From positions 186,001 to 250,000 of IMG/VR virus record IMGVR_UViG_3300021057_000274: a stretch of 64,000 nt of DNA; one strand, written 5' to 3'. Positions 30,574 to 59,708 of the stretch are shown here, piece after piece. Under the pieces are notes generated by a model. That model ran no database searches. It was given only the letters and a program-made list of their open reading frames with translations, and was not told where the DNA came from. How positions within the stretch are numbered: the stretch's first letter is position 1; every line of letters begins with the position of its first letter. Made by a program: the position numbers and the translations under genes.

Positions 30574-31496
30574 GCGTTAACCTTTTGAGAGTAGGGAGCT
30601 TTGACCGGTCGATTGAAAGCGTCCAACGCGATCGGTAGAATATTTAGCCTCACCACTAGACAATTATTTGTTTGGATTCCAACGGCTTGGTGACCGAACT
30701 TGTCGAAGAGGAGGCCGGTGAAGAGAGCGACGCCTCCAGACGTCTTTCGCTTGATGTTATTCAAGGGAGCTGGGAGATCAACGTCGCGCGTGATGATGTC
30801 CGAGGCGAGATGCGGCGCGCGTGTCGGGTCATTGACGTCGAGACCGTAGAAGTCATAGACCCGAACGCGCGAGTCGGTGGTCGTGCTGGCATCTCCCTCA
30901 TTGACGACGGGCGTCTGGAAGAGGATCTTCGGGTTCTTGAACTTCGAGTCGACGTTGTTGACTAACACCGGCTGCCCGTCGATCCGATAGGCGAGCGCGA
31001 GAGGCTTTCCGGTCGCGTCATACGTCTGGTCAAAGCGAATCTCGAGGGGCAGCCGATCGGCAGGAAGCGTGGTCGGCGGCTCATAGTTGACCCACTCCGT
31101 CTTCGCCGACGAGAGCTGGTTCAACGCGTTCTTCGAGATGTCAAAGAGAGCCCGCGTCGTCGTGTAAGCGTCCGGAGCCGTCGCGGCGAAGATCGCGTTG
31201 AGCTCCGCTAGCGAGAGCAACTTGAACGAGGGAAGCAACCTGAAGACGCGATGGGTCTGGTTGTACGGAGCTCCGCGCCCCTCGTCGAGAAAGATCCCGA
31301 TCGTCACCCACTTGCCACCCATCGTCCAACTCTTCGCGCCGCGCTCTGGCGCCGCCGAGATGACCGCGGTACAGAAGAAGTCATCTCGGTTGTCTGGCTC
31401 GTACCAGTTGAAGTGTGACGGCACGACCAGGTCCTCTCCGTCGATCGAGTAGAGGTCATAGAACGCGTTTGTCGGGTCGTTGAACGGGACGCTCAC
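30570..31496 (-). CDS. Hypothetical (probably virion) protein
   Basis: 308-aa coupled ORF in a late operon. Confidence 0.65.
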   Translation of the reverse strand: MSVPFNDPTNAFYDLYSIDGEDLVVPSHFNWYEPDNRDDFFCTAVISAAPERGAKSWTMGGKWVTIGIFLDEGRGAPYNQTHRVFRLLPSFKLLSLAELNAIFAATAPDAYTTTRALFDISKNALNQLSSAKTEWVNYEPPTTLPADRLPLEIRFDQTYDATGKPLALAYRIDGQPVLVNNVDSKFKNPKILFQTPVVNEGDASTTTDSRVRVYDFYGLDVNDPTRAPHLASDIITRDVDLPAPLNNIKRKTSGGVALFTGLLFDKFGHQAVGIQTNNCLVVRLNILPIALDAFNRPVKAPYSQKVNA

Positions 31497-32269
31497 TCTT
31501 CCTCACCCTTCTTTGACGGCTTCTTCTTGACATCTTGCTCGTCCTCAACCGGCTCCTCGGGCTCATCGGACTCCTCTTCCTTCGGCTCCTCCTTCTTGGG
31601 TTTGGCGACGACCTCCTTGAGCTTCGCCTGGACCATCTCGGCGATGACGTCGTCGTACTCCCCGAAAACCTGCTTGAAGACCTTCTTGAGCTCGGTCTTC
31701 GTCTCCGCTTGCAAGATGCGGTTGCGCACCTCTGTGCCAGACAGTCCGCTCTCACCCATCGGCACGATCGTATAGTAGCCTCCCTCCTTCGCGAGGGAGA
31801 GATCCTCGAGCTTGAAGTCCTTCGGAAGCTTGGAGAAGAAGTCCGACTTCTCGTAGCGCTCGGCGTCCTTTTTGCCGACGGCCGAGAGGTAGACGAGGTC
31901 ATACCCCTTGTATTGCTGGAAGATCTCCTTCGGACTGAAGGCCGGGTTCTTGCACTCGACGACGCGCCGCGGGCGAACGCCGTAGAGGGTGACGATCAGC
32001 TCTTGCTTCTCGATGAAGCTGAACGGCGAGACCTTGCCCTCCTCGGCCTTGAAGTTGGTCTTGTTCGAGGTGGCGATCCACACGTTCTGCTTGCCGAACT
32101 TCCGGCAGAGCCAGCGATAGGCGTGGTAGTGGCCGAGGTGAAAGGGTTGGAAGCGTCCGCCGTAAACGACCACCAGCTTGCGGGTGTTCTTCTCGTCAGC
32201 CTCTGGAATCTCAGGCTCCTCGTCATCGATCGGCTTGGCGGTGATGTCCTTGAGTTCAGTGAGCTTCAT
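31493..32269 (-). CDS. HIGH-superfamily cytidylyltransferase-like protein with acidic tail
   Basis: VVVYGGRFQPFHLGH, PFSFIEK, VGKKDAER, SGTEVRNRI. Confidence 0.8.
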   Translation of the reverse strand: MKLTELKDITAKPIDDEEPEIPEADEKNTRKLVVVYGGRFQPFHLGHYHAYRWLCRKFGKQNVWIATSNKTNFKAEEGKVSPFSFIEKQELIVTLYGVRPRRVVECKNPAFSPKEIFQQYKGYDLVYLSAVGKKDAERYEKSDFFSKLPKDFKLEDLSLAKEGGYYTIVPMGESGLSGTEVRNRILQAETKTELKKVFKQVFGEYDDVIAEMVQAKLKEVVAKPKKEEPKEEESDEPEEPVEDEQDVKKKPSKKGEEE

Positions 32270-32283
32270 TCGTTTCCCGGGGT

Positions 32284-32305
32284 TAAATATGCTTGCTTCT
32301 ATTTA
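32284..32305. promoter_or_regulatory. Opposed late promoters (+ TAAATA 32284-32289; - 32300-32305)
   Basis: ttaaata-tgcttgcttc-tatttac at a divergent gene junction. Confidence 0.55.
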
Positions 32306-32516
32306 CAGGCAAACAAAATGGCCGCCATAGACATATATGAGCCCTGTGAGCACTGCGGGTATGACACCGTGCATCCAGACTCTTGCCCAAACTCAGAGGT
32401 TTCGCTCGCAAAATCGCGTGCTGAATCGCGAAAATGTTCATCTTTCGCGAAGAATGATAGGATCCAATCCTCTTCCACTCTAGAAAGAGGCTTTATAGAA
32501 GGCAGATTCTCACAAA

Positions 32517-33182
32517 ATGGCGAACCATTACCCTCGCGGTAAAAGAGCAAAAAACGACACAAAACCCGAGACGACGGCGAAGTACTACCTCACCAACGCC
32601 AAGCTTCTCCCAGCGGTGATTCGCGCCAAGACGATCGGGAAGATGACCGACGAGCTAGCCGAGATGCTCCTCATGCTGACGCGCAAATACGCGCAGCGCC
32701 CCTGCTTCAACGGTTACACCTACAAGGACGACATGATCTCAGAGGCGATCACGAACCTCTGTCTGAACGCCTTGAAGTTCAACTCTGACAAGTACGACAA
32801 TCCGTTCGCTTACTACACCACCTGCATCAACAGCTCCTTCCTTCAGTTCTTGAACGTAGAGAAGAAGCACCGGCGCATCCGCGACATGCTCCTGATCGAC
32901 GTCGGCGAGAACCCGAGCTTTAACTTCACCGTCGACAGCCACAAGCAAGAGGGCGGAGAGTTCACTGGCGAGCTCCGTGAACTGAAGCAACAGATCGAGG
33001 AGGCGAAGGTTCGGACCGTCGAAGAGGCTGCGCTAGCCGTCAAGATCGCCGAGGAGAAGCGCGTCCAAGCGATCAAGGATCGAGAAGAGGCTCTCAAGAT
33101 GAGCGAGTCAGAAACGGTCCGTGATCTCGAGTACGTTGAGCCGGAGCTGCAAGAAGCCGCGCTTCTTACGTACGACGAATGA
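32517..33182 (+). CDS. gp55: Late transcription sigma factor
   Basis: YYLTNAKLL..FNGYTYKDDMISEA..KFN..K..NPFAYYT..INSSFLQFLNVEKK; directly upstream of gp47/gp46. Confidence 0.9.
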   Translation: MANHYPRGKRAKNDTKPETTAKYYLTNAKLLPAVIRAKTIGKMTDELAEMLLMLTRKYAQRPCFNGYTYKDDMISEAITNLCLNALKFNSDKYDNPFAYYTTCINSSFLQFLNVEKKHRRIRDMLLIDVGENPSFNFTVDSHKQEGGEFTGELRELKQQIEEAKVRTVEEAALAVKIAEEKRVQAIKDREEALKMSESETVRDLEYVEPELQEAALLTYDE

Positions 33183-33222
33183 GAAAATATCCTCCGCCCT
33201 AGGTGGAGGATCTAATATCGGG

Positions 33223-34308
33223 ATGGCAGTAGTCCCGCAGCGCTTCAAGAAGATCGGCATCTTCACCGACATACATTTCGGGCGTCGGTCAAACTCTCGC
33301 GTTCACAATCAAGACTGTCTAGACTTCATCGATTGGTTTTGCGCTCAGCTCGACGACAGCTACTCCCACATCGCATTTCTAGGAGACTGGTTTGAGAGCC
33401 GCTCGGCGATCAACATCGAGACGCTCCACTTCTCCTACCAGGGGCTCCAGAAGCTCAACTCGGTCGGTAAACCTGTCTACTTCTGCGTCGGCAACCATGA
33501 CCTGCATCGCCGAACTACTCGCGAGATCCACTCTGTTCAGATGTTTCAAGAGCTCGACAACTTTCACGTGATCGACAAGCCAGTAGTCGAGGACGGCTTG
33601 CTCTTCTCGCCCTACCTCTTTCCTGAGGAGTACCCGACCATGGTCGAGCACAACAAGCTCTGGGCCTGGCTAGGGCACTTCGAGTTCAAGGGCTTCGTCG
33701 TCACCGGCCAGGGACATGCGCTAGAGCACGGACCCGTCCACACCAACTTTGTCGGGCCGAAGCGCATCTTGACTGGCCACTTTCACAAGCGCCAGAGCCA
33801 GGACAACGTTCACTACGTCGGCAACGCATTTCCGATGGACTTCGGTGACGCGGGTGACTACGAGCGCGGGATGGCGACCTACTACGTCCCTGAGGACAAG
33901 CTTACCTTCACCAACTGGTCGAGTTGTCCCAAATACCTAAAGACGTCGCTGTCCAAGATCATGGGGCAAGACACGATCAAGGCCTTCCTTCCCCGGATGA
34001 AGGTCAAGTGCGTCATCGACGAGGAGCTAGGATACCAGGACGCTCAAGACCTGCGCGTCGCGATGATCGAGCAGTATCACCTACGTGACTTCATCCTCGA
34101 GGAGGATCGAGAGGCGAAGCAAGGGTTGCTAGAGGGTGACAACGCCAAGGTGGTCGACGGGTTGGGTGACTTCGGCAGCATGGATGACCTCGTCATCCAG
34201 CAGCTAGAGATGGCCAAGGATGACAAGAAGGCGAAGATCGACGTGAACCTGTTGATCGAGATCTACAAGAGCGCGGTCGCTGAGGTAGAAGACAAGGAGG
34301 AAGAGTGA
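33223..34308 (+). CDS. gp47: Recombination nuclease, Mre11/SbcD-like
   Basis: FTDIHFG, LGDWF, VGNHD, LGHFE and GHFH metallophosphoesterase motifs; start revised to ATG 33223. Confidence 0.92.
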   Translation: MAVVPQRFKKIGIFTDIHFGRRSNSRVHNQDCLDFIDWFCAQLDDSYSHIAFLGDWFESRSAINIETLHFSYQGLQKLNSVGKPVYFCVGNHDLHRRTTREIHSVQMFQELDNFHVIDKPVVEDGLLFSPYLFPEEYPTMVEHNKLWAWLGHFEFKGFVVTGQGHALEHGPVHTNFVGPKRILTGHFHKRQSQDNVHYVGNAFPMDFGDAGDYERGMATYYVPEDKLTFTNWSSCPKYLKTSLSKIMGQDTIKAFLPRMKVKCVIDEELGYQDAQDLRVAMIEQYHLRDFILEEDREAKQGLLEGDNAKVVDGLGDFGSMDDLVIQQLEMAKDDKKAKIDVNLLIEIYKSAVAEVEDKEEE

Positions 34309-34682
34309 AGCTGTTCGAGCGCAAGGACCACTACGAGGGTCAAGGATTCGCCAAGGCCGTCTTCGGCTTCGGCAAGATGTACCAAATGGCGGAGATCTGG
34401 AAGAACCACCAGCGCGCCGCCGACGAGCCGGAGTGCTGGGCGTTTACCAATGAGTGGCGTGCGAATGGCTGGTACGTGATCATCAACGTGCCTTTTATCT
34501 TCAAGCGACCGTACATCGACCCGAACTCATACTTTGAGAGGGAAGGTCCTTGCCGTCTAGTTTATCTCATCACGCGGCGCACGCCTGTGCAACTCCCGCG
34601 CTTCATCGGCGACGTTCACACGACGAAGATGACTCCGACCACGAGATTCCACAAGGATTGGATGATCGTTGATCAAGGTTAA
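34305..34682 (+). CDS. Hypothetical protein
   Basis: GTGA-coupled ORF with SD. Confidence 0.65.
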   Translation: MKLFERKDHYEGQGFAKAVFGFGKMYQMAEIWKNHQRAADEPECWAFTNEWRANGWYVIINVPFIFKRPYIDPNSYFEREGPCRLVYLITRRTPVQLPRFIGDVHTTKMTPTTRFHKDWMIVDQG

Positions 34683-34923
34683 GGTCACGGTGACAGGTCT
34701 GGGCGGCTGCATCTTCTACGAGGCCGACGTCATTCGGCGGGCCTTCGAGGGGTTAGGCTACGATGTTTCCGTGACGTCAAAGTTTGACTCGCACGACATC
34801 CCTTTCCCCGAGAAGCCAGATGAGTTCTATTCTCGGCGCACCGAGCAACTCCTCGAGCGAGTCAAGGCGGGTGAACATCCCCAGCTTGAGCTCACGATCA
34901 TACATCAACCCTGGGGCGGCTGA
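34669..34923 (+). CDS. Hypothetical protein
   Basis: Overlapping ORF in the operon, ends HQPWGG. Confidence 0.6.
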   Translation: MIKVKVTVTGLGGCIFYEADVIRRAFEGLGYDVSVTSKFDSHDIPFPEKPDEFYSRRTEQLLERVKAGEHPQLELTIIHQPWGG

Positions 34924-35087
34924 TGAGATACGGACTCTGGGAGCTCAGATATCTCTCAAGCAAGGAGGGTCGTCACGGGGAATGGTTCAAGTGGTGGCTT
35001 AAAGATCCTTCTAGAGACGTCTATCGTGACGGCGGAAGCGTCGAGTGGCGCGTCGGGCCGTTCGTGCTCACGAGGTGGATCTCATGA
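34923..35087 (+). CDS. Small Trp-rich hypothetical protein (54 aa; not in track)
   Basis: TGATG-coupled start; its stop overlaps the gp46 ATG (ATGA); MRYGLWELRY...LTRWIS. Confidence 0.55.
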   Translation: MRYGLWELRYLSSKEGRHGEWFKWWLKDPSRDVYRDGGSVEWRVGPFVLTRWIS

Positions 35088-37027
35088 GCGAGATCAATCT
35101 CGACCTTGTCCGCTTCAGAAACTTCATGTCGTTCGGCAACTCGTGGACCGAGGTCAACTTGCGCTCGCGCGGCACGACGTTCATCGTCGGCGAAAATCTT
35201 GACGAGGGCGGCTCCTCTGGCGCAGGCAAGACGACGACGATCAACGCGATCGCCTACGCCCTTTACGATCGGGTGCTCGACAAGCATCTGAACAAGGACC
35301 AGCTGATCAACACCACCAACGCCAAGCAGAACACGCTGATGGAGGTGGAGCTGTACATGCGGCGAGGCGATCAGCGTTACGTCATCAAGCGCTGGCGCGG
35401 CGCGGAGTCGGGTGTCAAGCTTCTCGAAGAGGGACATCCTCTCGACCCCAAGCATGAGCCGGTCATGATCGGCGACGTCGTCTTCAGGGACGTCACCCCG
35501 GCCGCCGTCAATCGCGGAGAGGACAACTTCAACAAGAAGGTGATCGAGCTCTTCGGCTTCTCCTACGAGCTCTTCTCGAGGATCATCCTCTTCGAGGGAA
35601 ATTCGGTACCCTTCCTCAGCCAGACCGCTGGCATCCAGCGCTACATCATCGAGGAGCTGCTCAGGATCCGGATGTTGACCCAGAAGGCCAACTACATCAA
35701 GAAGCAGATCCAGCTGACGGAGAAGGACATCGACGTTCAGAAGATGCTGATCAAGCAGCAAGAGCTCCAGAACGAGAGCCAGCTGAAGCGCATCGCTGAC
35801 GCCGAGGAGCGAGTCAAGCGCTGGGAAAAGGGCCGCGAGGAAGACTTCACGATGATCCAGGCCGAGATCCAGAAGCTGTCCGATGTCGACTTCGAGACCG
35901 AGGAGCAGCTTCACGCTGAGATCCAAGCCCTCCAACAAGAGTTCGACGCCTTCAAACCCAAGTTCGACGCTCTGACGACTCGGCTGGCCGCGAAGCAACG
36001 AGAAGTTTCTCCCGCCCAGGCCGAGCTTAGCATCCTGATCTCGGGCATCGGGAAGAAGCGCAAGGACCACGAGCGTCATCACGCGAACTTCACTCACCTC
36101 CGCGACGCCAAGTGTCCGTTCTGCATGCAGGCGTTTACCGATCCGCACAAGATGCAAACCGAGGGGAACGCTTGGGCCGTCCTGGAGCAGGAGATCAAGC
36201 TCGACGAGCAACTGATCGATCAGCACGAGCGGCGCGTCGCGGAGGACAAGGCTAAGATCGCTGTCGAGATGCGCGAGATCCAGGCCGAGATCCAAGGGTT
36301 GACCGAGGAGCGGATGCAGATCAACGCCGCGATCCAGGAGGTCAAGTCGGCCGTCAAGTACCCGACGCTAACCGCGGCTCTCAAGGCTAAGAACAGCGTC
36401 ACCGCGCTCAACGAGAAGTTCATGAAGCGGGCGCAGGAGACGAATCCTCACCTAGAGACCGTCGCGGCTCTCAAGAGTGAGGGACTAGTAACGATCAACA
36501 GAGATGCCCTCGACCAATTGATCAAGTTTCATGAGCACCAGAAATTTTTGGTCAAGCTGCTGACTGACAAAAACTCCTACATTCGCAAGAACATCATCGC
36601 CAAGACGATCCCCTTCCTCAACAAGCGGATCGGCTTCTACACCGAGAAACTCAATCTGCCGCACATCATCCTCTTCCAGCCCGACATGAGCTGTCACATC
36701 TCACAGTATGGCCGCGAGCTTGGGCATGGAAACTTGTCGAACGGAGAGAAAAAGAGGCTAAATTTAGCGCTCTGCCTCGCGTTCCGTGATACATTGACCT
36801 ATCTTCACTCGAAGGTCAACGTGCTGTTCACCGACGAGGTCGACGGCGGATCGCTGGGTCAGCATGAGGTTGACCTGCTGATCAGCCTGCTCAAGCGAAA
36901 GGCTTGGGATGACGAGATCTCGATCTTCATCATCTCGCACCGTCCAGAGTTCGACGGTCGTTGCGATCGCAACCTGGTCGTCCGCAAGGAGGCTGGCTTC
37001 TCTCAACTCATTCCTCAGCCAGACTGA
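35084..37027 (+). CDS. gp46: Recombination ATPase, Rad50/SbcC-like
   Basis: NFMSFGN, Walker A SGAGKTT, coiled coil with CPFC zinc hook, LSNGEKKR signature, LFTDE Walker B, ISH. Confidence 0.93.
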   Translation: MSEINLDLVRFRNFMSFGNSWTEVNLRSRGTTFIVGENLDEGGSSGAGKTTTINAIAYALYDRVLDKHLNKDQLINTTNAKQNTLMEVELYMRRGDQRYVIKRWRGAESGVKLLEEGHPLDPKHEPVMIGDVVFRDVTPAAVNRGEDNFNKKVIELFGFSYELFSRIILFEGNSVPFLSQTAGIQRYIIEELLRIRMLTQKANYIKKQIQLTEKDIDVQKMLIKQQELQNESQLKRIADAEERVKRWEKGREEDFTMIQAEIQKLSDVDFETEEQLHAEIQALQQEFDAFKPKFDALTTRLAAKQREVSPAQAELSILISGIGKKRKDHERHHANFTHLRDAKCPFCMQAFTDPHKMQTEGNAWAVLEQEIKLDEQLIDQHERRVAEDKAKIAVEMREIQAEIQGLTEERMQINAAIQEVKSAVKYPTLTAALKAKNSVTALNEKFMKRAQETNPHLETVAALKSEGLVTINRDALDQLIKFHEHQKFLVKLLTDKNSYIRKNIIAKTIPFLNKRIGFYTEKLNLPHIILFQPDMSCHISQYGRELGHGNLSNGEKKRLNLALCLAFRDTLTYLHSKVNVLFTDEVDGGSLGQHEVDLLISLLKRKAWDDEISIFIISHRPEFDGRCDRNLVVRKEAGFSQLIPQPD

Positions 37028-37029
37028 CG

Positions 37030-37206
37030 ATGTTTCGCATTTACCGATCTTGCCGCCTCGACGGGACTACCTCTGAGCCGATCTACGCTAGAGACGGGGT
37101 GACGGTGATCGGCTATACCATCCACGAGCAACTCAACCCTCTAGAGACCCGCGAGGATTGGCAACGCTACTGGGACAACTACTTCAAGAAGCCAGAGGAA
37201 AAGTGA
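37030..37206 (+). CDS. Small hypothetical protein
   Basis: ATG 2 nt after the gp46 stop; GTGA-coupled to glutaredoxin. Confidence 0.5.
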   Translation: MFRIYRSCRLDGTTSEPIYARDGVTVIGYTIHEQLNPLETREDWQRYWDNYFKKPEEK

Positions 37207-37439
37207 GAATCGTCATCATCGGAAAGAACGTCGGATGCGCCTGGTGCGAGCGCGCCAAGAAGTTCCTCGACGAGAAGCAGCTCGAGTACACCTACTTCGC
37301 GGTCGAAGATCACCCGGTGATGAGGGATCTTCTCGTCGCGATGGGGATCCGCACCGTGCCAGCGGTCTTCGTCGAGGGGTTGGGCGGCGGCATCTTTCAC
37401 CTCGGCGGCTACAATGAGCTCCAGGAGCACGTGCGGTGA
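37203..37439 (+). CDS. Glutaredoxin (NrdC/NrdH-like)
   Basis: CAWC active site, RTVPAVF, LGGYNEL; GTG start with SD. Confidence 0.88.
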   Translation: MRIVIIGKNVGCAWCERAKKFLDEKQLEYTYFAVEDHPVMRDLLVAMGIRTVPAVFVEGLGGGIFHLGGYNELQEHVR

Positions 37440-37888
37440 CGACTTGGGACGCTCCGTGGGTACAGCCGGGTGAGGCGCCGACGCAGATCGAGGGCAACCT
37501 CTGGATCGGCGCCTTCCCTCAACCGTGGGTGCGCCGCCAGTTTGACTACATCGTGTCGGTCGTCGACGCGAAGTTCTTCCCCGAGAAGCCCGGACAGATT
37601 CACGTCTGCATGCCCTTCGAGGACTCACCTGACGTCAAGCCTGTCTACTTTCACGCGATCGCTGACCTCGCTCACCGCTTCGTTCAGGACAGACCGACGC
37701 TCGTCCACTGTCAGCACGGGTACAACAGGTCAGGGGTGATCGTCGCCCTGACGCTGTTGCGGATGGGTTGGGAGCCCGAGAGGGCGGTCAATCACATCCG
37801 TGAAAAGCGTGGTGCTTCGGCCCTGTCGAACTACCACTTTCGCAACTGGATCTTAAGTAGTGCTCTACGAGCTCTGGCAGACTCCTAA
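37436..37888 (+). CDS. Dual-specificity protein phosphatase
   Basis: LVHCQHGYNRSG (HCx5R), LWIGA, PFED, IREKR. Confidence 0.88.
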   Translation: MTTWDAPWVQPGEAPTQIEGNLWIGAFPQPWVRRQFDYIVSVVDAKFFPEKPGQIHVCMPFEDSPDVKPVYFHAIADLAHRFVQDRPTLVHCQHGYNRSGVIVALTLLRMGWEPERAVNHIREKRGASALSNYHFRNWILSSALRALADS

Positions 37889-38441
37889 AGGTCAACTTCT
37901 CATCCCCACGGACAACGTCTCCTCGATTGAGGCGGAGTCTAAGAAGCTACACACCATCTTCGCGAGAAACATCGCGGAGGCGGAGCATCTTCGCGCCGAG
38001 TACACGCGCAAGATGATCAAGCAGCGAGGCACCACTGACTGCTCCGTCGCGACCGTCGCCATGGCCGCAGACGTGCCCTACGAGACCGTTCTAGAGAAAA
38101 CGCCCGCGGATGTCGTCGAGATCTTGCTCAGCAAGGGTTGCCTCGACAAGCACATGAGCGCGATGCTCAACGCGCTCGGCTACGAGAACTTCGTCGACTA
38201 CGAGAGACGAATCTTCTCGTGCCACTACGCGACGACATCCTTCACGCGAAACATGCTGTGGGGTCGTCGCGCGATCCTTACCGTGATGTCGAAGAACGTG
38301 CGTGACGGACAGCACAACATCTACTGGGACGGTCGGCAGCTCTTTGACCCGTCACCCTTGCAAGTTTACTATTGGCACGAGGTTGAGCCGATCGAGATCA
38401 TCTTCTTTGACGAATCTCGGCTTCGCAATAGAAAAAATTAA
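37860..38441 (+). CDS. Papain-fold C39-like peptidase domain protein
   Basis: IKQRGTTDCSVATVAM (Q..C), H.IYWDG..FDP. Confidence 0.6.
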   Translation: MLYELWQTPKGQLLIPTDNVSSIEAESKKLHTIFARNIAEAEHLRAEYTRKMIKQRGTTDCSVATVAMAADVPYETVLEKTPADVVEILLSKGCLDKHMSAMLNALGYENFVDYERRIFSCHYATTSFTRNMLWGRRAILTVMSKNVRDGQHNIYWDGRQLFDPSPLQVYYWHEVEPIEIIFFDESRLRNRKN

Positions 38442-43684: not shown

Positions 43685-43685
43685 G

Positions 43686-47277: not shown

Positions 47278-48996
47278 ATGCCAGGCATTTTCACGGACTA
47301 CTGGCGGATCGTAAAACCCGCCCCCGCTAAGACCCAGTACACGGCTTCCAGCCCGGAAGTTGCCAAGCTCTACAGCAACTTCTCGTGGTACACGAAGATC
47401 ATGAAGGGGGCGGCGTCCAGGTTCGCCAAGTACGCCCAGTACAAGAACATGGACAACGACGTGTTCGTCTCCCGGGCGCTTGACACGATCGCCGAGGAGA
47501 TGACGCAGCCGAGCGCCAGAACCAAGCTTCCATTCGAGATCGCCTACCAGAACGAGAGCGACGGGGACGTGCCTGACGCGGTCTCGACTACGATTCGCGC
47601 CGCGCTCCGCCACTGGGTCGACGTCCAGGACTTGAACACTCTCCTCTTTGACATCGCCCGCACGGCGATCAAGTACGGTGATTGCTTCTTCCGGAAGGCC
47701 TCTGACCTAAAGAAGTGGCAGTACGTCGATCCGAACGACGTGATCGGCATCTCGGTCGACAAGGACGGCAAGCCGGAGCACTACCACGTTCGTCACCAGG
47801 ACGTCTCTCGCCCGATGGGCGGCACGACGGTCGGTGAGGTCGCGATCATCCCGGCCGCTGGCATCGTCCACTTCACCCGCGCGAGCTCGATGGACGACAA
47901 CGGGCCGTTCGGCGAATCGGTCCTCCAGCCGTGCGTCCGCGCCTTCCGCCACCTCTCGCTCCTCGAGGACTCGGTCATCATCTACCGCATCGTCCGCGCG
48001 CCTGAGCGCCGTGTTTTCTTCCTCGACGTCGGTCACATGCCGCCGCAGCGGGTCAAGGCCTTCCTCGAGGCGGTCAAGACCGAGATGAAGCAGAAACGCA
48101 TCCCGAACGAGACCGGCGGCACGGACAAGATCGACTCGGTGTTCAACCCGATGTCGATGACCGAAGATTACTTCTTTGCTCAGACGGCCGACGGCCGCGG
48201 CTCAAAGGTCGAGACGCTCTCTGGCGGCGAGAACCTAGGCGAGATCGCTGACCTGAACTACTTCCAGAACAAGTTTCTTCAGGGCCTTAGGATCCCGTCA
48301 AGCTACATGAGGGGCGGCAACGACGGCGGGATCGCGATCGCCGACGGCAAGGTCGGCATCGCCTACATCGAGGAGGTTCGCTTCGCCAATTACGTGGGGC
48401 GGTTGCAGTCGAAGATAAACGATACCTTCGACCAACACTTCAAAGCGTACCTCAAGTCAGCTGGCATCAACATTGATCACCACCTGTTCAAGTTGAGACT
48501 CGTCGATCCGCAGAACTTCTTGAACTACCGAGACGCTGAGGTAGCCGACAAGATGATCTCGAACTACAACGCGATCAAGGACATCAAGGTCCTCTCCGAG
48601 CAGTTCAAGCTCGAGCGCTACCTCAGCCTGACTGAGGACGAGATCCAGGAGAACGAGATTCTGCTCAAGAAGGAGCGCTGCATCCCCGAGGAGGGTCTAG
48701 GTCCGCGCCTGACCGCTCACCGCATGATGTATGACCCGCAGTGGCAAGAGAACCTTCCGGACATCAAGGTCCCGGAGAGCTTTGAGGACCACACCAAGAC
48801 CGAGGAGGGTGGGGGTGGGGAGGAGGGCGAGGAGCTCAACACCGACGAGATGAGCGCTCCTGGTGAGGAGGGCGAAGAGGGGAAGGACGCGCCTGAGGGT
48901 GAGGAGGGTGGCGGTGAGGAAGAGACGGGCGGCGACGAGCCGGCCACAGAGACCGAGGAAGACACCGGTGGCGAGGCTCCCCCTAAGGAGAAGTGA
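47278..48996 (+). CDS. gp20: Portal protein
   Basis: LLEDSVIIYRIVRAPERRVFFLDVGHMPP, SMTEDYFF, GRGSKVETLSGGENLGEIADL, LRIPSSY, EEVRFA. Confidence 0.95.
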   Translation: MPGIFTDYWRIVKPAPAKTQYTASSPEVAKLYSNFSWYTKIMKGAASRFAKYAQYKNMDNDVFVSRALDTIAEEMTQPSARTKLPFEIAYQNESDGDVPDAVSTTIRAALRHWVDVQDLNTLLFDIARTAIKYGDCFFRKASDLKKWQYVDPNDVIGISVDKDGKPEHYHVRHQDVSRPMGGTTVGEVAIIPAAGIVHFTRASSMDDNGPFGESVLQPCVRAFRHLSLLEDSVIIYRIVRAPERRVFFLDVGHMPPQRVKAFLEAVKTEMKQKRIPNETGGTDKIDSVFNPMSMTEDYFFAQTADGRGSKVETLSGGENLGEIADLNYFQNKFLQGLRIPSSYMRGGNDGGIAIADGKVGIAYIEEVRFANYVGRLQSKINDTFDQHFKAYLKSAGINIDHHLFKLRLVDPQNFLNYRDAEVADKMISNYNAIKDIKVLSEQFKLERYLSLTEDEIQENEILLKKERCIPEEGLGPRLTAHRMMYDPQWQENLPDIKVPESFEDHTKTEEGGGGEEGEELNTDEMSAPGEEGEEGKDAPEGEEGGGEEETGGDEPATETEEDTGGEAPPKEK

Positions 48997-50660: not shown

Positions 50661-50666
50661 TAAATA
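50661..50666 (+). promoter_or_regulatory. Late promoter (TAAATA)
   Basis: Upstream of the prohead protease gene. Confidence 0.7.
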
Positions 50667-50690: not shown

Positions 50691-51314
50691 ATGACCAAAC
50701 TCGCAGTCCTGATCGAAAACCTCTCGCCGACCACGGCGAACCTGATCGTTGAGGAACATGGCCCGACGAAGGCTTCTTACCTCAGCGGCATCTTCATGCA
50801 GTCCGAGATCCAAAACGGCAACGGCCGGATCTACCCTCTCGCCGAGATCAAGTCGGCGATCGAGAACGTCAACAAGAAGATCAAGGAAGGTCACACGATC
50901 TACGGTGAGCTCAACCACCCGGACAATCTCCAGATCGACCTGAACAACGTCTCCCACATCATCACGGAGATGAAGCTGGCGGGCAACGACGCGGTCGGCA
51001 AGGCCAAGATCCTCAACACCCCGAAGGGTCAGATCGTCAAGGCGATCATCGAGGGCGGAGGCAAGCTTGGGGTCTCTTCGCGCGGCTCTGGCAACGTCAT
51101 CGAGGGCAAGGTCAACAGCTTCAACCTGGTGACGGTCGACATCGTCGCTCAGCCGTCGGCTCCTGACGCTTATCCGTCGCACGTGATGGAAGCTCTCCAG
51201 GGCGACAAGAAGGTCATGACTCTGGCTGAACAGGTGTGCCACGACAAGGCCGCCCAGAAGCACTTCATCAAGGCGATCAATGAGTTCTTCGAGTCGCTCA
51301 AGGGAAAGAAGTAG
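50691..51314 (+). CDS. gp21: Prohead core protease
   Basis: GIFMQSE..NGNGRIYP, GELNHP, VSHII, GKAKILNTPKG, LGVSSRGSG, DIVAQPSAPDAYP. Confidence 0.95.
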   Translation: MTKLAVLIENLSPTTANLIVEEHGPTKASYLSGIFMQSEIQNGNGRIYPLAEIKSAIENVNKKIKEGHTIYGELNHPDNLQIDLNNVSHIITEMKLAGNDAVGKAKILNTPKGQIVKAIIEGGGKLGVSSRGSGNVIEGKVNSFNLVTVDIVAQPSAPDAYPSHVMEALQGDKKVMTLAEQVCHDKAAQKHFIKAINEFFESLKGKK

Positions 51315-52212: not shown

Positions 52213-52215
52213 GCC

Positions 52216-52869
52216 GTGGAGCTTCTCCTAGAGCTCCTGGCTCTTCGAGAAGCTAAGGGCCTCACCCTCAGTACCGATAATCCTGGCGGCAAGTGGCTCG
52301 AGAAAGAGCAAGAGTACTGCCGTAGCCAGGGAATGAGCAAGGAGTTCGGCTCACCTAATCGGTTTGGACCCGTCACCGCCACCTGGTCACGCCAACCGCT
52401 GATTCTCGTCGATGTTGTCGCCAAGATCAAGGGCTTACGCGCCGAACAGCGTTCCGTTCGTGAGCAATCTCTCAGCTTCCTCTTAAAGCACATGGAGGAG
52501 AACGATCGTCTTCCACCTAGTCTCAACGCCACTGACGCGATGTCTGAGCCAAACCAGCTCCAGTCAAAGAACTACAAGCAATACGCGCCATTCATCACGG
52601 TCTGGTACGACGGGACTCCCTGGATCAGCGAGGGGAATCACCGCATCATGGCTGCCAAGAAGCTAGGTTGGAAGTACATTCCGATCGAGCTTCGATATTT
52701 CACCGGAGGCGAAGAAGCTGACGGTCCTCTATCGCCAGCCAAGGTAAAAGCTATGGATTCTGAGGCGATCGCCGCTGGTTTTAAGCCAGAAAATGAGTTT
52801 CGTGCTCATCCAGAAAGAAGGCGGCTTAGCTCTAGAAAGCTAAGAAAAGTAAGCACTAGAAGCACATAG
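52216..52869 (+). CDS. ParB/sulfiredoxin-like domain protein
   Basis: APFITV..ISEGNHRIMAAKKLGWKYIPI. Confidence 0.7.
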   Translation: MELLLELLALREAKGLTLSTDNPGGKWLEKEQEYCRSQGMSKEFGSPNRFGPVTATWSRQPLILVDVVAKIKGLRAEQRSVREQSLSFLLKHMEENDRLPPSLNATDAMSEPNQLQSKNYKQYAPFITVWYDGTPWISEGNHRIMAAKKLGWKYIPIELRYFTGGEEADGPLSPAKVKAMDSEAIAAGFKPENEFRAHPERRRLSSRKLRKVSTRST

Positions 52870-52934
52870 AAATTAGTTTTAGCAGTTTCCTCCCATAAAG
52901 CGTCGAGATCTTAGCGAGAAAAGGTGCTCGATTC

Positions 52935-52940
52935 TAAATA
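52935..52940 (+). promoter_or_regulatory. Late promoter (TAAATA)
   Basis: Upstream of the scaffold and capsid genes. Confidence 0.7.
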
Positions 52941-52999
52941 CTAGTCATTGATTCTGGTGAGTTGTTTTCACCAGCCACATAACACCGGAGAAGCAAGCG

Positions 53000-53917
53000 A
53001 TGGATGAAATCCTGAAGAAACTGCTTGAATCCGATCTCCTTAGTGAAGAAACTAAGGCTGAGATCAAGGGTCAGTGGGAAGCCGCTACCCAGAAGTATCT
53101 CGCCGAAGAACGCGCTAAGATCGAGGTCGAGGTTCGCTCCACCTTGACGGAAGAGTTCGTCAAGGCACGGGAAGAGCTTGCTGCCAAGGTTGACGTCAAG
53201 ATCGAAGAACAGCTCAAGGCTGAATTCGATGAGCTCAAGGCCGACATCGAGAAGTTTCGTGATCTCGAGGTCGAGTACGCCGAGAAGCTGGTTGACGTCA
53301 AGGAAGAGCTGGCGCAGCAACTCGGTGAGCAACTGAACCAACTGGTCGACAAGCTCGACGCCTTCCTCGAGGTTCGCCTCGATGAAGAGATGGGCGAACT
53401 GAAGGGCGACATTGACGAAGTCAAGAAGCTCGAGTTCGGTCGTCGCATCTTCGAAGCTGTTGAATCCGAGTTCAAGAAGTTCCGCGCGGTCGATCTCAAC
53501 GAGGTCGAGCAGAAGCTGGGCGAGACGCAAGACGCTCTGGCCGACGCGCAGAACAAGATCGCTGCGATGGAGAAGGCACGCCTCTCCGAAGCTCGCAACG
53601 CCAAACTCGAAGAACTTCTGTCACCGCTGAGCGGAACCGCTCGCGAGCAGATGAAGATCATTCTCTCCAACGTCGCCACGGAGAAGCTTGACGAGGCCTT
53701 CAAGTCGTACATCGGTAAGGTCCTCAAGGAATCCGTGGTTGAACCGAAGAAGAATGAAACTCAAGCGGCACCTGCCACCGCGCCTCTGAAGGAAGACAAG
53801 CAGCCTACGGGCAAGCTCGTCACCGGAAACGAGAACGCGGAGCCGGCACCGGTTGAAGACAACAAGACGAACGATCAGCTTGCTCGCATTAAGAAGTTGG
53901 CGGGTCTGTCTCGATAA
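53000..53917 (+). CDS. gp22: Prohead scaffolding protein
   Basis: Acidic coiled coil, LLESDLLSEETK, GRRIFEA; immediately upstream of the capsid gene. Confidence 0.85.
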   Translation: MDEILKKLLESDLLSEETKAEIKGQWEAATQKYLAEERAKIEVEVRSTLTEEFVKAREELAAKVDVKIEEQLKAEFDELKADIEKFRDLEVEYAEKLVDVKEELAQQLGEQLNQLVDKLDAFLEVRLDEEMGELKGDIDEVKKLEFGRRIFEAVESEFKKFRAVDLNEVEQKLGETQDALADAQNKIAAMEKARLSEARNAKLEELLSPLSGTAREQMKIILSNVATEKLDEAFKSYIGKVLKESVVEPKKNETQAAPATAPLKEDKQPTGKLVTGNENAEPAPVEDNKTNDQLARIKKLAGLSR

Positions 53918-53942
53918 CGACACCTTTTACAAGGAGCCTCAC

Positions 53943-55295
53943 ATGAAGGAACTGTTCGAAAACTGGGAAGCGACCAAGAAGACTCTGGTCGAGGGCCTGG
54001 ACGCGCGTCGCGCGGCGATCGTTTCCACGGTGCTGGACAACCAACGCCAATACCTGACGGAAACTGCAGCTGCTGATGCCACTAGCGTTGGAAACATCGC
54101 TAGCTTCCAGAAGATCATGCTCCCGATGATCCGCCGTATCATCCCAGGCACCATCGCGACCGAGCTTGTCGGCGTTCAGCCGATGACTGGTCCGGTTGGC
54201 CTGGTCTTCTCGCTGCGCTTCGTCTTCAAGAACACAGCGACCACGTCGGAAACCCCTGGCGGCGACATCGCTGTCAATGACGAAGTCTTCGGTAACACGT
54301 CGGCAACCCCGCCGTACTCGTCGAAGATGCGTCGGTTCTACTCCGGCGGTATCGATCCGGCTGCCTCTGGCGGTCTCTACGATGCCACCTTCGGAGTGAA
54401 CCAGGGCGGTGCATACACTCCTGGCAGCTCGTTCTCGCTGTCTTCGACGCCTCTGAGCGGCGAAGCCGGTGACACGGTTGACATGGAATCGTTCCCTGGC
54501 CGCAACATGGGTCTGCAGGTTGTTCGCCAGCCGGTGAACGCCAAGACCCGCAGGCTGCAGGCCAAGTGGACCATCGAAGCGATGCAGGACCTCTCGGCCA
54601 TGCACGGGCTAGATCTCGAGTCGGAGATCACCCAGGCGCTGTCGGCTGAGATCGTGCACGAGATCGACAATGAGATCGTGACGGACCTGATCCGCCTCGC
54701 TGGCACCACCGAGACCTTCGACATGTCGGGCACCTTCACGGGCGTTCCGCACTACGTCGGTGATCGTCACGCCGTCCTCGGCGTCCTGATCAACAAGGTC
54801 GCGAACGAGATCGCAGCCAAGACGCGTCGCGGCGCTGGCAACTTCATCGTTGTCTCCCCGCAGATCGTCTCGCTCCTCCAGTCGGCGTCCAAGTCGGTGT
54901 TCGCACCGGCCGTTGCCGGATCCTTCTCGGGTCCGAACAACACCCAGCTGGTCGGCACGCTGAACGGCACCATCAAGGTCTACAGCTTCCTGTTCAACGC
55001 GTCGTTCGCGACCGTTGCGACGGCGACCGCTGTGCCGGGTGGAGCTGGCGCGTCCTCGGAAGTCATCCTCGTCGGCTACAAAGGCGGCGGCGGTGAGACC
55101 GACACGGGCTACTTCTACTGCCCATACATCCCGCTCATGACCACGAACACGGTCACTGACCCGGCGACGTACGGCAGCCAGCTGATGGTGATGACCCGGT
55201 ACGGAAAGGTGACGTTCACCAACTCCGCTACCTCGCTCGCCAACAGCGCGGACTACTACGGCAAGATCATCGTCAACAACATCACCTTCCTCTAA
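53943..55295 (+). CDS. gp23: Major capsid protein
   Basis: PMIRR..ELVGVQPMTGPVGLVFSLR, AKTRRLQAKWTIEAMQDL..HGLD.E.E, TRRGAGNF, FYCPYIPL, MTRYG; AAGGAG SD before ATG 53943. Confidence 0.97.
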   Translation: MKELFENWEATKKTLVEGLDARRAAIVSTVLDNQRQYLTETAAADATSVGNIASFQKIMLPMIRRIIPGTIATELVGVQPMTGPVGLVFSLRFVFKNTATTSETPGGDIAVNDEVFGNTSATPPYSSKMRRFYSGGIDPAASGGLYDATFGVNQGGAYTPGSSFSLSSTPLSGEAGDTVDMESFPGRNMGLQVVRQPVNAKTRRLQAKWTIEAMQDLSAMHGLDLESEITQALSAEIVHEIDNEIVTDLIRLAGTTETFDMSGTFTGVPHYVGDRHAVLGVLINKVANEIAAKTRRGAGNFIVVSPQIVSLLQSASKSVFAPAVAGSFSGPNNTQLVGTLNGTIKVYSFLFNASFATVATATAVPGGAGASSEVILVGYKGGGGETDTGYFYCPYIPLMTTNTVTDPATYGSQLMVMTRYGKVTFTNSATSLANSADYYGKIIVNNITFL

Positions 55296-55827
55296 ACCGG
55301 GAAGGTAGTTGCTGGCACGTAGTAGAAGCATCAGCCAAAGCATCAGAGGAGAGGGTCACTTCGGTGACCCTTTCCTTTTGGTTCAGCTGTTGAGTGAACC
55401 TCTCGAAGGGCGAGAGAACGGATGATCTTAGCTCGGAGATTCCACTTACGCCGCGATTGAAGCCTGCTTTAGGATTCCAATCCGCGCTTAGAATTGTCAA
55501 CTCGCAAATCACGTCTGCGACCGTACGGTAGTGCTCGTTTGCCGCGACTTGATCACCGACTGTTCTGCTACTTTCGCATGATGCTGTTCCGTGCTTCCAA
55601 GCACACTCGAGCACGTAGCCAGTCTTCACCCACTTCGTGGTGATCGTGTAGGACGAGATAACTCTACCAGCTCCGTCAAGAAGCTGCACGGTGTTGCGAA
55701 GGAACCAATCTCGCTCGTGCACAGGTAATTGATGTTGCGAGTAGTTCGAGTGCATCTTGTTCGAGATGCTAGGACCCGTCCAACCGTGCGGCTTCGAAAA
55801 GTAAGTGGTGCCGGTGAAGTCGCTCAT
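55282..55827 (-). CDS. Hypothetical protein
   Basis: ATGA-coupled; the 3' end runs through the gp23 terminator. Confidence 0.55.
   Translation of the reverse strand: MSDFTGTTYFSKPHGWTGPSISNKMHSNYSQHQLPVHERDWFLRNTVQLLDGAGRVISSYTITTKWVKTGYVLECAWKHGTASCESSRTVGDQVAANEHYRTVADVICELTILSADWNPKAGFNRGVSGISELRSSVLSPFERFTQQLNQKERVTEVTLSSDALADASTTCQQLPSRFRGR
55346..55379 (+). terminator. Rho-independent terminator (UUCG loop) after gp23
   Basis: agggtcac-ttcg-gtgaccct followed by ttcctttt. Confidence 0.85.
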
Positions 55828-56087
55828 CGCCCCTGAAGGAATCTGTCTGTCATGTTACCGACCGCGGCCTTGTAGTACTCGAGATACTCACGAGCTTCCT
55901 GCACCGTCATGTCGTGAATCTTCTTGATGATGTCTACGTTGTGAAAGTTGTAGGTCTCGAAGTGTGATCCCTCAGGCAACCCGACGATGTGAATCTCGTA
56001 GGCTGGTCCGCTGGGAGTGCTCGTGTCATACGTTACCACCGCCCACGGTCCGACCTTGTCGTGATAGATGATCGGTGGCTCAGTCAT
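55824..56087 (-). CDS. Hypothetical protein
   Basis: ATGA-coupled ORF. Confidence 0.65.
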   Translation of the reverse strand: MTEPPIIYHDKVGPWAVVTYDTSTPSGPAYEIHIVGLPEGSHFETYNFHNVDIIKKIHDMTVQEAREYLEYYKAAVGNMTDRFLQGR

Positions 56088-56620
56088 GCTCTAGACCAGA
56101 GGTGCACATGAGGAAACTGCGGAACGGTCCCGCGCACTAGCCGCGTGGTGACGTTGAGGGGGCGCTCGAAGAGGATGATCTCGTTTACGTCTAGCTTGAG
56201 GTGCATGACGCATCTCGCGATGAACTTCATCACTGATGAGCGATCAACGAGGGGGCTCGCGCACCAAACTATTCGCTGCTTTGTGTCCGTTGGGAGATCA
56301 TAGGGGTACGCGTTGTCTGCTAGGAGAATCAGACTTCGCTGAAAATAGGCATCTACCTCGGCTGCGAGCTGTTCTTTGGTGAAGGTGTGATAGTAAGCGT
56401 ACATCGTGTCGCTCTTGAGCGGCACGAGCTGAAGATTTTTGATCGACCTGCGACGCGCTAAGAGGTCATCGAAGCTAGGGTAGTTCGGAACGAGAATGGG
56501 CTCAGGGCTCTCGGTCACTAGCTCTCCAGCGACGACCTTGAGAGGCGTCATCAATCGCTTGATCTGGTTGAGCAACCGTGGCTCGGGAACGTGCTCACGC
56601 ACGTCTCTCAGCCGAATCAT
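56084..56620 (-). CDS. DUF3605/HIT-like protein
   Basis: DNAYPYDLP..IVW and terminal TVPQFPHVHLW; start revised to ATG 56620 (GGAG SD, ATGA overlap). Confidence 0.5.
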   Translation of the reverse strand: MIRLRDVREHVPEPRLLNQIKRLMTPLKVVAGELVTESPEPILVPNYPSFDDLLARRRSIKNLQLVPLKSDTMYAYYHTFTKEQLAAEVDAYFQRSLILLADNAYPYDLPTDTKQRIVWCASPLVDRSSVMKFIARCVMHLKLDVNEIILFERPLNVTTRLVRGTVPQFPHVHLWSRA

Positions 56621-56820
56621 CTCCACAGGCCGCTCTCGACCCAGTGCTCTGGACAGAACCACTTCTGGTTCTTTCCGTAAGTTGACGGTTGTGGGCACTT
56701 CGAGCACGGAAACGGCACTGGGACCTCCTTCGGTCCGTCTGGCGTCATGATCGTTGCCCGGTAAGCTTCATTCTTCGGCATCTCCTCGGTCTGGAGAAGG
56801 CCTTCAATGTCAAGATCCAC
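56617..56820 (-). CDS. Small zinc-finger-like protein
   Basis: CSKC..WFCPEH; GTG 56820 lies 5 nt after the -10 element. Confidence 0.55.
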   Translation of the reverse strand: MDLDIEGLLQTEEMPKNEAYRATIMTPDGPKEVPVPFPCSKCPQPSTYGKNQKWFCPEHWVESGLWR

Positions 56821-56825
56821 TAGAG

Positions 56826-56854
56826 ACTTTAACATATTCGTAGCAATGAGTAAA
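56826..56854 (-). promoter_or_regulatory. Sigma70-like promoter TTTACT-17-TAAAGT (extended -10), leaderless
   Basis: Same TTTAC -35 as the promoters at 5213, 50596 and 59710. Confidence 0.55.
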
Positions 56855-56890
56855 CATGAAGCATTCTTGGCTCAAGCGTTGCTCTGGAGA

Positions 56891-56896
56891 TAAATA
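56891..56896 (+). promoter_or_regulatory. Late promoter (TAAATA)
   Basis: gATAAATAc upstream of the sheath gene. Confidence 0.7.
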
Positions 56897-56927
56897 CCTC
56901 CGACATCTTGAATCAGGAGACAATTCG

Positions 56928-58502
56928 ATGCCCACTCTAGTTTCCGCCGGTGTAAGCGTTACGATCGAAGATGAGAGCTTCTACATCCCAGCCTCAGCTT
57001 CGACGGTGCCGCTCTTCATTCTTGCGACTCGTGCTGACAAGTTGCAGCCTGACGGCGTGACCGCGGCAGCTGGAGCGCTCGAGAACAACGTCGTTCGCAC
57101 GATCACCTCGTTGAACCAGTCGGTGACAACGTACGGCGTCCCTCACTTCCGAACCACTGGCAGCGCTCAGCATCACGGCGACGCTCGCAACGAGTACGGC
57201 CTCTTCGCACTGAACCAGTATCTCTCGCTCGGCAACCTGGCTTACACGGTTCGTGCTAACGTTGACCTAGCTGACGCTCCTGTCATCACCTGGTCAGCTT
57301 CGGCTCCAGCAGCTGGCGGCGGCAACGTCGGTAACGGCACGGTCGGTAGCTTGACCGTTGACCAGAACACTGCTGTCGCTGAGACTTGGACCCTGACCGC
57401 TACTAACGCGACGACCTTTACGGTTGACGGTTCGGTATCGGCCCCGGTCCCGAACGCGACCGTCGGCACTCCGTACAGCAACGGCATCGTGTCATTCACG
57501 ATCACGGCAGGCGGCACCGCGTTCCAGGCGGGTGACACGTTCACCTTTACGGTGTCTTCTTCGACCCAGAACAACCCTCTCGGCGCGACCGACGCGCTCC
57601 GTCGCACCACGATCGTCAGCGCTCTCGCGTCGGTGATCAACAGCAACATGGATATTCGCTCTGACCTCTACGAGTACAACATCCTCTGCTGCCCTGGCTA
57701 CCATGAGGTCGTTGATGAGCTCCTCGCGCTGAACGACGCGATCGGCAAGGAAGCTTTCATCGTTGCGGATACGCCGTTCAACAAGACCCCAGAAGAGACC
57801 GCAACCTGGTCCCTGACGGTTGACCGTCGTCGCAGCGAGAACGTTTCCTACTACTACCCGCACTGCCTGGCCTCAAACCTGGACGGTGTGGAGGTCTTCG
57901 GAGCTGCCTCTGGTGTCGCCCTCAAGGCGATCACCTACAGCGACAACGTCTCTGAGGTCTGGATGCCGCCTGCTGGCTTCCGCCGTGGCAACGTGACGGG
58001 CGTGGCGAACATCGGTTACGTCACCGGCACTCTCGGTGCGGCGACTACCTTTGTGGCAGCTCCGCTCAACCAGGGTCAGCGTGACGCGCTCTACGACTTC
58101 AACAAGAACGTCAACCCGATCTCGTTCTTCCCTGGCCGCGGCATCACCGTGTTCGGTCAGAAGACGTCTTACAACGTCGCGTCGGCGCTCGACCGCATCA
58201 ACGTGGTTCGCCTGCTGAACAAGATGAAGCGGGACATCCGCAAGGCGTCTATGTCGTTCTTGTTCGAGCTGAACGACCGGATCACGCGCGAGACGATCAA
58301 GGCGATGATCGACGATTACCTCAGCGACATCCTGCAGCGCCGTGGCTTGTACGATTACGTTGTGCAGTGCGACGAGCAGAACAACACCGCTGTACGTATC
58401 GATCGCAACGAGCTGTGGGTCGACATCGCGGTCAAGCCGGCGAAGGCTGTGGAGTTCATCTACATCCCGATTCGCGTCGTGACCACTGGAGCAGATCTCT
58501 AA
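56928..58502 (+). CDS. gp18: Contractile tail sheath protein
   Basis: LVSAGVSVTIEDES, WMPPAGFRRG, RDALY..VNPI..FPGRG..FGQKT, SALDRINVVRL, VQCDEQNNT..IDRNEL.VDIAVKPAKAVEFIYIP. Confidence 0.95.
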   Translation: MPTLVSAGVSVTIEDESFYIPASASTVPLFILATRADKLQPDGVTAAAGALENNVVRTITSLNQSVTTYGVPHFRTTGSAQHHGDARNEYGLFALNQYLSLGNLAYTVRANVDLADAPVITWSASAPAAGGGNVGNGTVGSLTVDQNTAVAETWTLTATNATTFTVDGSVSAPVPNATVGTPYSNGIVSFTITAGGTAFQAGDTFTFTVSSSTQNNPLGATDALRRTTIVSALASVINSNMDIRSDLYEYNILCCPGYHEVVDELLALNDAIGKEAFIVADTPFNKTPEETATWSLTVDRRRSENVSYYYPHCLASNLDGVEVFGAASGVALKAITYSDNVSEVWMPPAGFRRGNVTGVANIGYVTGTLGAATTFVAAPLNQGQRDALYDFNKNVNPISFFPGRGITVFGQKTSYNVASALDRINVVRLLNKMKRDIRKASMSFLFELNDRITRETIKAMIDDYLSDILQRRGLYDYVVQCDEQNNTAVRIDRNELWVDIAVKPAKAVEFIYIPIRVVTTGADL

Positions 58503-58522
58503 GCTCTCACTTAGAGAAGTAA

Positions 58523-58552
58523 AGAAGCCGCCTTCGGGCGGCTTCTGTCTTT
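58523..58552 (+). terminator. Rho-independent terminator (UUCG loop) after gp18
   Basis: agaagccgcc-ttcg-ggcggcttct-gtcttt. Confidence 0.8.
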
Positions 58553-58559
58553 CTGGAGC

Positions 58560-58565
58560 TAAATA
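58560..58565 (+). promoter_or_regulatory. Late promoter (TAAATA), leaderless
   Basis: 4 nt before ATG 58570. Confidence 0.65.
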
Positions 58566-58569
58566 GAAG

Positions 58570-58878
58570 ATGCGACTTTCTGAGATCATCGCCGCTCGAG
58601 GCGAACCCCGCAAAGCTACGAAATTTCGGCTACAGTCGGCCGTTCCAGGCACGAAAAATTGGGAAGACTTGAGCAAGGAGCCAGTAACTCGTGAGGAGGC
58701 GACCGAGTTTCTAGAGCAAAACCCAGACGAACACTTGATGAAGTATAGGGCGCTCGGCGTCGACACCAATGAGACCCTCTACCGTGCAGATAAGCCCGAC
58801 CTGAAGAGCACGTTAGCACGCCACGCGCCTCCTGAGGTTCACAAGCGTAACGAGGACTTCTTCAAGAAATATCTATGA
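58570..58878 (+). CDS. Hypothetical late protein (MRLSEI N-terminus)
   Basis: ORF directly after a late promoter. Confidence 0.7.
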   Translation: MRLSEIIAARGEPRKATKFRLQSAVPGTKNWEDLSKEPVTREEATEFLEQNPDEHLMKYRALGVDTNETLYRADKPDLKSTLARHAPPEVHKRNEDFFKKYL

Positions 58879-59708
58879 AACTCACCGAGCTCGTCGAGGA
58901 CATCTATCTGTCACCAGACTCGAAGCGAGTCGTGGTGGCGACCTCGAACAGCAAGGTTCAGCGAGCCTCTGGGGATGACTTCATCAGCACCGCCAAGCCG
59001 AAGCTTCCTCACCGCTCATCATCGACCACCCGCACGGGAGGCGTCGTTGTCTACAGCGCTTACCTCTACCACCCGAGCAAGATCGTCACCGAGATTCTCT
59101 CGTCGATCAAGGGTAAGGGGCCGTACGAGGTGATCGACAACTCTGTCAATCACTTTATCGACGAGACAGCAGCTTGGATGGGGCCCATCCTGCAGAGCCG
59201 CATCAACCCGACGCTCGTCGTTTTCCCGCGATCTTCATCCGGGTTGACTAAGCGATTCGCCGCGAGCCTCACCAAGCACTTCAAGAACGCTGAGATGATC
59301 GAGGACGCGTTCGTCAAGAACGTGATCAACATCACCGGTGACGAGCAGAAGGATCGAGCGATGGTCGGGTCACTGATCGACATCGACCATCCAAAGTTCG
59401 AGACGTTGAGCAAGGAGACCGTTGACGAGCTCGAGAAGCGGTTGCTGTCTCTCCTCAAGCGCGAGGGATCTGGAATCGTTCCGATCAAGAAGATCTATAA
59501 GCCGCTCGCGCAGTTCATCAAGGGCTTCATCAAGGCCGAGAACATCAAGGAGAACTTGAAAGGGGCTCGCGTCTTGGTCGTGGATGACATTCAGTCCTCT
59601 GGGACCACGATGCGTGAGATGGTTCAGATCGCTGAGGCCCGCGGCGCAGAAACTATCAACGGAGCGACGATCTTTCGCCAAACTTCGAAGGCATCGGAGA
59701 AAAAGTAG
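58875..59708 (+). CDS. Type I phosphoribosyltransferase-fold protein (MKLTELVE N-terminus)
   Basis: VFPRSSS; RVLVVDDIQSSGTT PRPP-binding motif. Confidence 0.8.
   Translation: MKLTELVEDIYLSPDSKRVVVATSNSKVQRASGDDFISTAKPKLPHRSSSTTRTGGVVVYSAYLYHPSKIVTEILSSIKGKGPYEVIDNSVNHFIDETAAWMGPILQSRINPTLVVFPRSSSGLTKRFAASLTKHFKNAEMIEDAFVKNVINITGDEQKDRAMVGSLIDIDHPKFETLSKETVDELEKRLLSLLKREGSGIVPIKKIYKPLAQFIKGFIKAENIKENLKGARVLVVDDIQSSGTTMREMVQIAEARGAETINGATIFRQTSKASEKK

What the first reader, a model, noticed from the sequence alone, without database searches (positions are those of the whole stretch)
31493..59708. Shared MKL(T/S)(E/D)L N-terminal tag on unrelated late proteins: candidate capsid-targeting signal for injected enzymes
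Seen: unrelated proteins start MKLTDLLVEA (769, minus), MKLTELKD (32269, cytidylyltransferase-like), MKLTELVED (58875, PRTase) and MRLSEII (58570). Related starts are MELLLELLALREA (52216, ParB-like) and VSFKDLLE (51706). All lie downstream of TAAATA late promoters. Established: T4 internal proteins share a ~10-aa capsid-targeting sequence that gp21 removes after (L/I)xE. Inference: this phage packages and injects several enzymes, including a nucleotidyltransferase, a PRTase, a ParB/Srx protein and a zincin-like protein. These may counter nucleotide- or NAD-depleting defences; that role is speculative.
Basis: partly seen in the sequence, partly recalled or inferred. Interest (0 to 1): 0.7.

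Follow-up and report, generated by a model that had tools for sequence, protein, structure and literature searches.

The report
T4-like capsid-targeting tag, jumbo phage
About thirty to forty-five unrelated proteins of this 389-kb T4-related jumbo phage begin with the same nine-residue peptide, which closely matches the signal phage T4 uses to load proteins into its head and then cut off, so the phage probably ships a large and varied protein cargo (including NAD-pathway-like enzymes) into the host with its DNA.

Summary
The window lies in a 389,331-bp T4-related jumbo phage whose nearest isolate is Ralstonia phage RsoM2USA.

- **The motif:** 26 of 509 predicted proteins start M-[KR]-[LIV]-x-[DE]-[LIVF], against about 1.4 expected (P 2e-25). 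A matrix trained only on relatives finds 31, against 0.5 expected.
- **The carriers:** they are mutually unrelated, and their synonymous codons vary.
- **Unselected positions:** these add a hydrophobic-x-Glu site with Glu at residue 8-9 (54% against 12%).
- **Match to T4:** the pattern is the T4 head propeptide shifted by one residue, as read from the T4 record (gp24 MAKINELLRE, Alt MELITELFDE, IPII/III MKTYQEFIAE, IPI MKTFKEF).
- **Second form:** MxFKxFLxE[AS] replaces the first form in orthologues and paralogues.
- **Protease:** a gp21-type prohead protease lies in the window, with a conserved LIE at residue 9.
- **Conservation and timing:** orthologues keep the tag, and tagged genes are enriched behind TAAATA late promoters.
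- **Published support:** two RsoM2USA proteins found in virions by mass spectrometry start MKTFKQFL.

Encapsidation and cleavage in this phage are inferred, not shown. The anti-defence role is speculation. This is a new variant of a known mechanism. Confidence is about 0.6.

The parts
1..769 (-). Tagged 294-aa protein of unknown function, MKLTDLLVE|A. It starts at 769 and ends outside the window at genome 185,885. It sits directly behind the gp25-like gene 769-2193.
   Evidence: No Pfam, PHROG or NCBIfam hit. Weak zincin-like look-alikes, motif HRFAH. A paralogue at genome 265988 starts MKLSSLLEA.
2231..2236 (-). TAAATA late-promoter-like box 37 nt before gene 769-2193. It heads the transcription unit that contains the tagged gene at 769.
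31493..32269 (-). Tagged NaMN/NMN-adenylyltransferase-like enzyme (258 aa), MKLTELKD. Layout: tag helix 3-9, linker 10-29, Rossmann core from residue 30.
   Evidence: Pfam CTP_transf_like 6.6e-7. NCBIfam nearest to NMN/NaMN adenylyltransferases. AF2 model with pLDDT 93-97 in the core and about 54 in the tag. The Foldseek top 50 are all NadD/NMNAT. About 120 homologues nearly all carry the tag.
32300..32305 (-). TAAATA box 30 nt before the start at 32269.
47278..48996 (+). Portal protein (T4 gp20 family), with TAAATA 23 nt upstream.
   Evidence: Pfam Portal_T4 7e-93.
50661..50666 (+). TAAATA box 24 nt before the protease gene. It heads the unit that holds genes 51712 and 52216.
50691..51314 (+). 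Prohead protease (T4 gp21 family). It is the presumed enzyme that removes the tags. Its own N-terminus is MTKLAVLIE|N.
   Evidence: Peptidase_S77 1e-29 / 6e-29. 36% identical to T4 gp21, with GELNHP and GVSSRG conserved. [LI][LI][IV]E is conserved in all orthologues. T4 gp21 removes its own nine N-terminal residues (PMC9958956).
51712..52212 (+). Cys-rich 166-aa head-module protein, MTATKVSFKDLLEGE. Its tag is of the second form.
   Evidence: No family hit.
52216..52869 (+). 217-aa protein (GTG start), (M)ELLLELLALRE|A. It is ParB/Srx-like by look-alikes, with the motif EGNHRIMAAKKLG.
   Evidence: No Pfam hit.
53000..53917 (+). Scaffolding (gp22-like) protein, MDEILKKLLESDLLSEE.
   Evidence: Pfam T4_CASP 3e-4, phrog_10922 1e-22. 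Orthologues.
53943..55295 (+). Major capsid protein (gp23 family). It has YLTE|TAAAD close to where T4 has FLTE|AEIGG.
   Evidence: Pfam Gp23 6e-94.
58560..58565 (+). TAAATA box 4 nt before the start at 58570. This spacing suggests a leaderless-like late transcript.
58570..58878 (+). Tagged 102-aa protein of unknown function, MRLSEIIAAR.
   Evidence: No family hit.
58875..59708 (+). Tagged 277-aa protein, MKLTELVE|D, with a C-terminal PRPP-binding loop (VLVVDDIQSSGTT). Its start overlaps the stop of gene 58570.
   Evidence: Pfam Pribosyltran 2.8e-10. Homologues start MKIKELLED, MKLRELSND and, in G001, MITFKQFLSET.

Best explanation
The shared N-terminus is a T4-type capsid-targeting and maturation propeptide.

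**Proposed mechanism**
1. A short amphipathic acidic helix forms the tag: M-K-[L/I/F]-x-[D/E/Q]-[L/I/F/Y]-hydrophobic-x-E. It also occurs in the variant form M-x-F-K-x-F-L-x-E-[A/S].
2. Late in infection the tag binds the scaffolding core of the growing prohead, so the protein behind it is enclosed.
3. The gp21-type prohead protease (window 50691-51314) then cuts after the Glu of the (L/I)-x-E site at residue 8-10 and frees the mature protein inside the head.
4. The protein leaves with the DNA at the next infection.

**Shown here**
- The motif, its excess over chance, its portability between unrelated proteins, its conservation in orthologues, and its detachment from the folded domain.
- Its residue-by-residue match to T4 propeptides.
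- The presence of the protease and the link with late promoters.

**Inferred**
- Binding to the core, cleavage, presence in virions of this phage, and ejection.

**Speculative**
- That the cargo acts on host defences or NAD metabolism. The cargo includes an NMN-adenylyltransferase-like enzyme, a PRPP-loop protein, a ParB/Srx-like protein, a lytic transglycosylase, an ADP-ribosyltransferase-like protein and many ORFans.
For: 1. **Excess and specificity.** 26/509 strict matches against about 1.4 expected. 31 against 0.5 with a matrix trained only on relatives. No such excess in XacN1, T4 or RaK2.
2. **Unrelated carriers.** All are BLASTP singletons after trimming. Synonymous codons vary: Leu3 uses six codons, and K alternates with R.
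3. **Unselected positions.** Residue 7 is hydrophobic in 18/26. A hydrophobic-x-E site with Glu at residue 8-9 occurs in 14/26 against 55/452 (OR 8.4, P 1e-6). P3 is Leu 11, Ile 2, Val 1.
4. **T4 propeptides read from NC_000866.** gp24 MAKINELLRE, Alt MELITELFDE, IPII/IPIII MKTYQEFIAE, IPI MKTFKEF, gp21 MNEPQLLIE. In IPIII, residues 4 and 7 direct targeting and residues 8 and 10 direct processing (PMC9026906). These map onto the most conserved positions here: 3, 6, 7 and 9.
5. **Protease.** A gp21 homologue with conserved His and Ser motifs and a conserved LIE-9. The capsid protein has YLTE|T close to T4's FLTE|A.
6. **Conservation with interchange.** 8 of 9 strict carriers that have orthologues in G001/G002 have tagged orthologues. 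The two tag forms swap between orthologues and within one paralogue family. Nearly all of about 120 homologues of the adenylyltransferase-like enzyme keep the tag.
7. **Structure.** The tag is a low-confidence helix (pLDDT about 54). A linker separates it from a core at pLDDT 93-97.
8. **Late promoters.** OR 3.4 (P 0.014) in this genome, OR 6.6 (P 2e-5) in G001 and OR 4.1 (P 8e-5) in G002.
9. **Published virion proteins.** RsoM2USA ORF89 and ORF132 start MKTFKQFL (PMC8504454). ORF89 belongs to the tagged paralogue family.
10. **Cargo typical of virion or ejected proteins.** An SLT transglycosylase and an ADP-ribosyltransferase-like protein. T4 Alt is a parallel.
11. **Turnover.** Tagged genes are less conserved than others: 10/33 against 169/319 (P 0.017). 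This is expected for arms-race cargo.
Against: - There are no proteomic or N-terminal data for this phage.
- In RsoM2USA only 2 of 10 reported virion bands carry a tag. With 13% of its genes tagged, that is not significant unless one counts only the MKTFKQFL form, which is a post hoc choice.
- The virion chitinase and lipase of XacN1 lack the tag.
- RaK2 has a gp21 homologue but no tag expansion.
- 12 of 26 strict carriers lack the second Glu site.
- Only 7 of 26 have their own TAAATA box.
- One carrier (genome 343078) has untagged orthologues.
- T4 gp61.1, in an early region, also starts MKTFKEFIKE, so a CTS-like start does not prove packaging.
- Loading 30-45 different proteins, among them metabolic enzymes, goes well beyond what is documented for T4.
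- The protease-peptide complex prediction gave no answer.
- Gene starts come from my own simple gene caller.
Confidence: 0.6

Rival explanations
1. The peptide is a docking motif for some other shared partner. Candidates are a phage chaperone, a tail or baseplate assembly factor, or a replication or metabolic complex. It would not be a capsid address.
For: The tag is a detached amphipathic helix of the kind that binds partners. Two in-window carriers lie in tail/baseplate operons (769 minus behind a gp25-like gene; 32269 heads a tail-gene operon). Metabolic enzymes are unusual head cargo.
Against: It matches T4 head propeptides position by position, including the processing residues. The protease's own N-terminus and the capsid protein carry the same type of site. 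Two tagged RsoM2USA proteins are in virions.
Confidence: 0.15
2. The peptide is only a substrate site or pro-sequence for the gp21-type protease, for example to keep enzymes inactive or to time their removal. It would have no targeting role, and the carriers would not be injected.
For: The hydrophobic-x-Glu site is enriched right after the conserved core. In T4, processing and targeting residues can be separated (PMC9026906).
Against: The most conserved positions (3, 5, 6) correspond to the T4 targeting residues, not the processing ones. Twelve carriers lack the second site yet keep the core. According to the T4 reviews, gp21 is active only inside proheads (PMC9958956).
Confidence: 0.12
3. The pattern reflects selection on translation initiation or on the mRNA 5' end, for example for leaderless late transcripts or a regulator binding site. 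It would not be selection on the protein.
For: Lys at position 2 is generally favoured. 29 genes have TAAATA only 4-9 nt before the start codon, which suggests leaderless transcripts. N-terminal codons are slightly more A/T-rich than average.
Against: Synonymous codons and K/R exchanges vary freely while the amino-acid pattern is kept. Only 5 of 26 carriers have the leaderless-like spacing. The related phages XacN1, RaK2 and T4 show no such excess. The pattern holds across genomes of 41-58% G+C.
Confidence: 0.04
4. The similarity is due to chance, to wrong start-codon calls, or to hidden paralogy.
For: Starts were called with a simple home-made method. In RsoM2USA and G002 most carriers do belong to one paralogue family.
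Against: P is about 1e-25. The motif sits at the first in-frame start in most ORFs. Carriers in this genome are BLASTP singletons. Orthologues keep the tag although alignments often begin after it.
Confidence: 0.02

Closest known systems
Capsid targeting sequence (CTS) of phage T4 internal proteins IPI, IPII and IPIII (Mullaney and Black 1996; reviews PMC3012670, PMC9026906, PMC9958956)
   Same: A roughly ten-residue N-terminal peptide is the only part shared by otherwise unrelated proteins. The pattern is the same: MK, an aromatic or hydrophobic residue, a polar residue, an acidic residue, two hydrophobic residues, x, Glu. It ends in an (L/I)xE site for the gp21 protease, and expression is late. 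The second form here (MxFKxFLxE[AS]; RsoM2USA MKTFKQFL) is almost the T4 IPI/IPIII sequence (MKTFKEF, MKTYQEFIAE).
   Different: The main form is one residue shorter, with Leu/Ile in place of Tyr/Phe. There are about 30-45 carriers per genome against a handful in T4. Carriers include recognisable enzymes and, in relatives, arrays of 40-50 paralogues, not just small basic proteins. Function is untested here.
N-terminal propeptides of T4 gp24 (MAKINELLRE) and Alt (MELITELFDE), removed by gp21
   Same: These are the closest sequence matches to the main form MK[LI]x[DE][LI]-hydrophobic-x-E. Alt is an enzyme injected with the DNA. This genome has a tagged ADP-ribosyltransferase-like protein.
   Different: gp24 is a shell protein, not cargo. 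No gp24 counterpart with the tag was identified here.
Propeptide-bearing ejection and inner-body proteins of phiKZ-like giant phages (phiKZ, 201phi2-1, SPN3US)
   Same: Giant phages load dozens of proteins into the head. These proteins are trimmed after Glu by a gp21-related protease (PMC9026906, PMC5694885).
   Different: In those phages the cleavage motif is S/A-x-E, the propeptides are long, and no short common N-terminal address is known. This phage belongs to another lineage (the RsoM2USA/XacN1 group).
Phage NAD-related enzymes (NadD/NMNAT-type adenylyltransferases; NAD reconstitution pathways). Comparison from my own knowledge, not looked up here.
   Same: The 32269 protein has the NadD/NMNAT fold with HxGH and SGTxxR-type motifs.
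   Different: It carries the N-terminal tag and a late promoter. Its activity and substrate are untested. The PRPP-loop protein lies 26 kb away, and no pathway link is shown.

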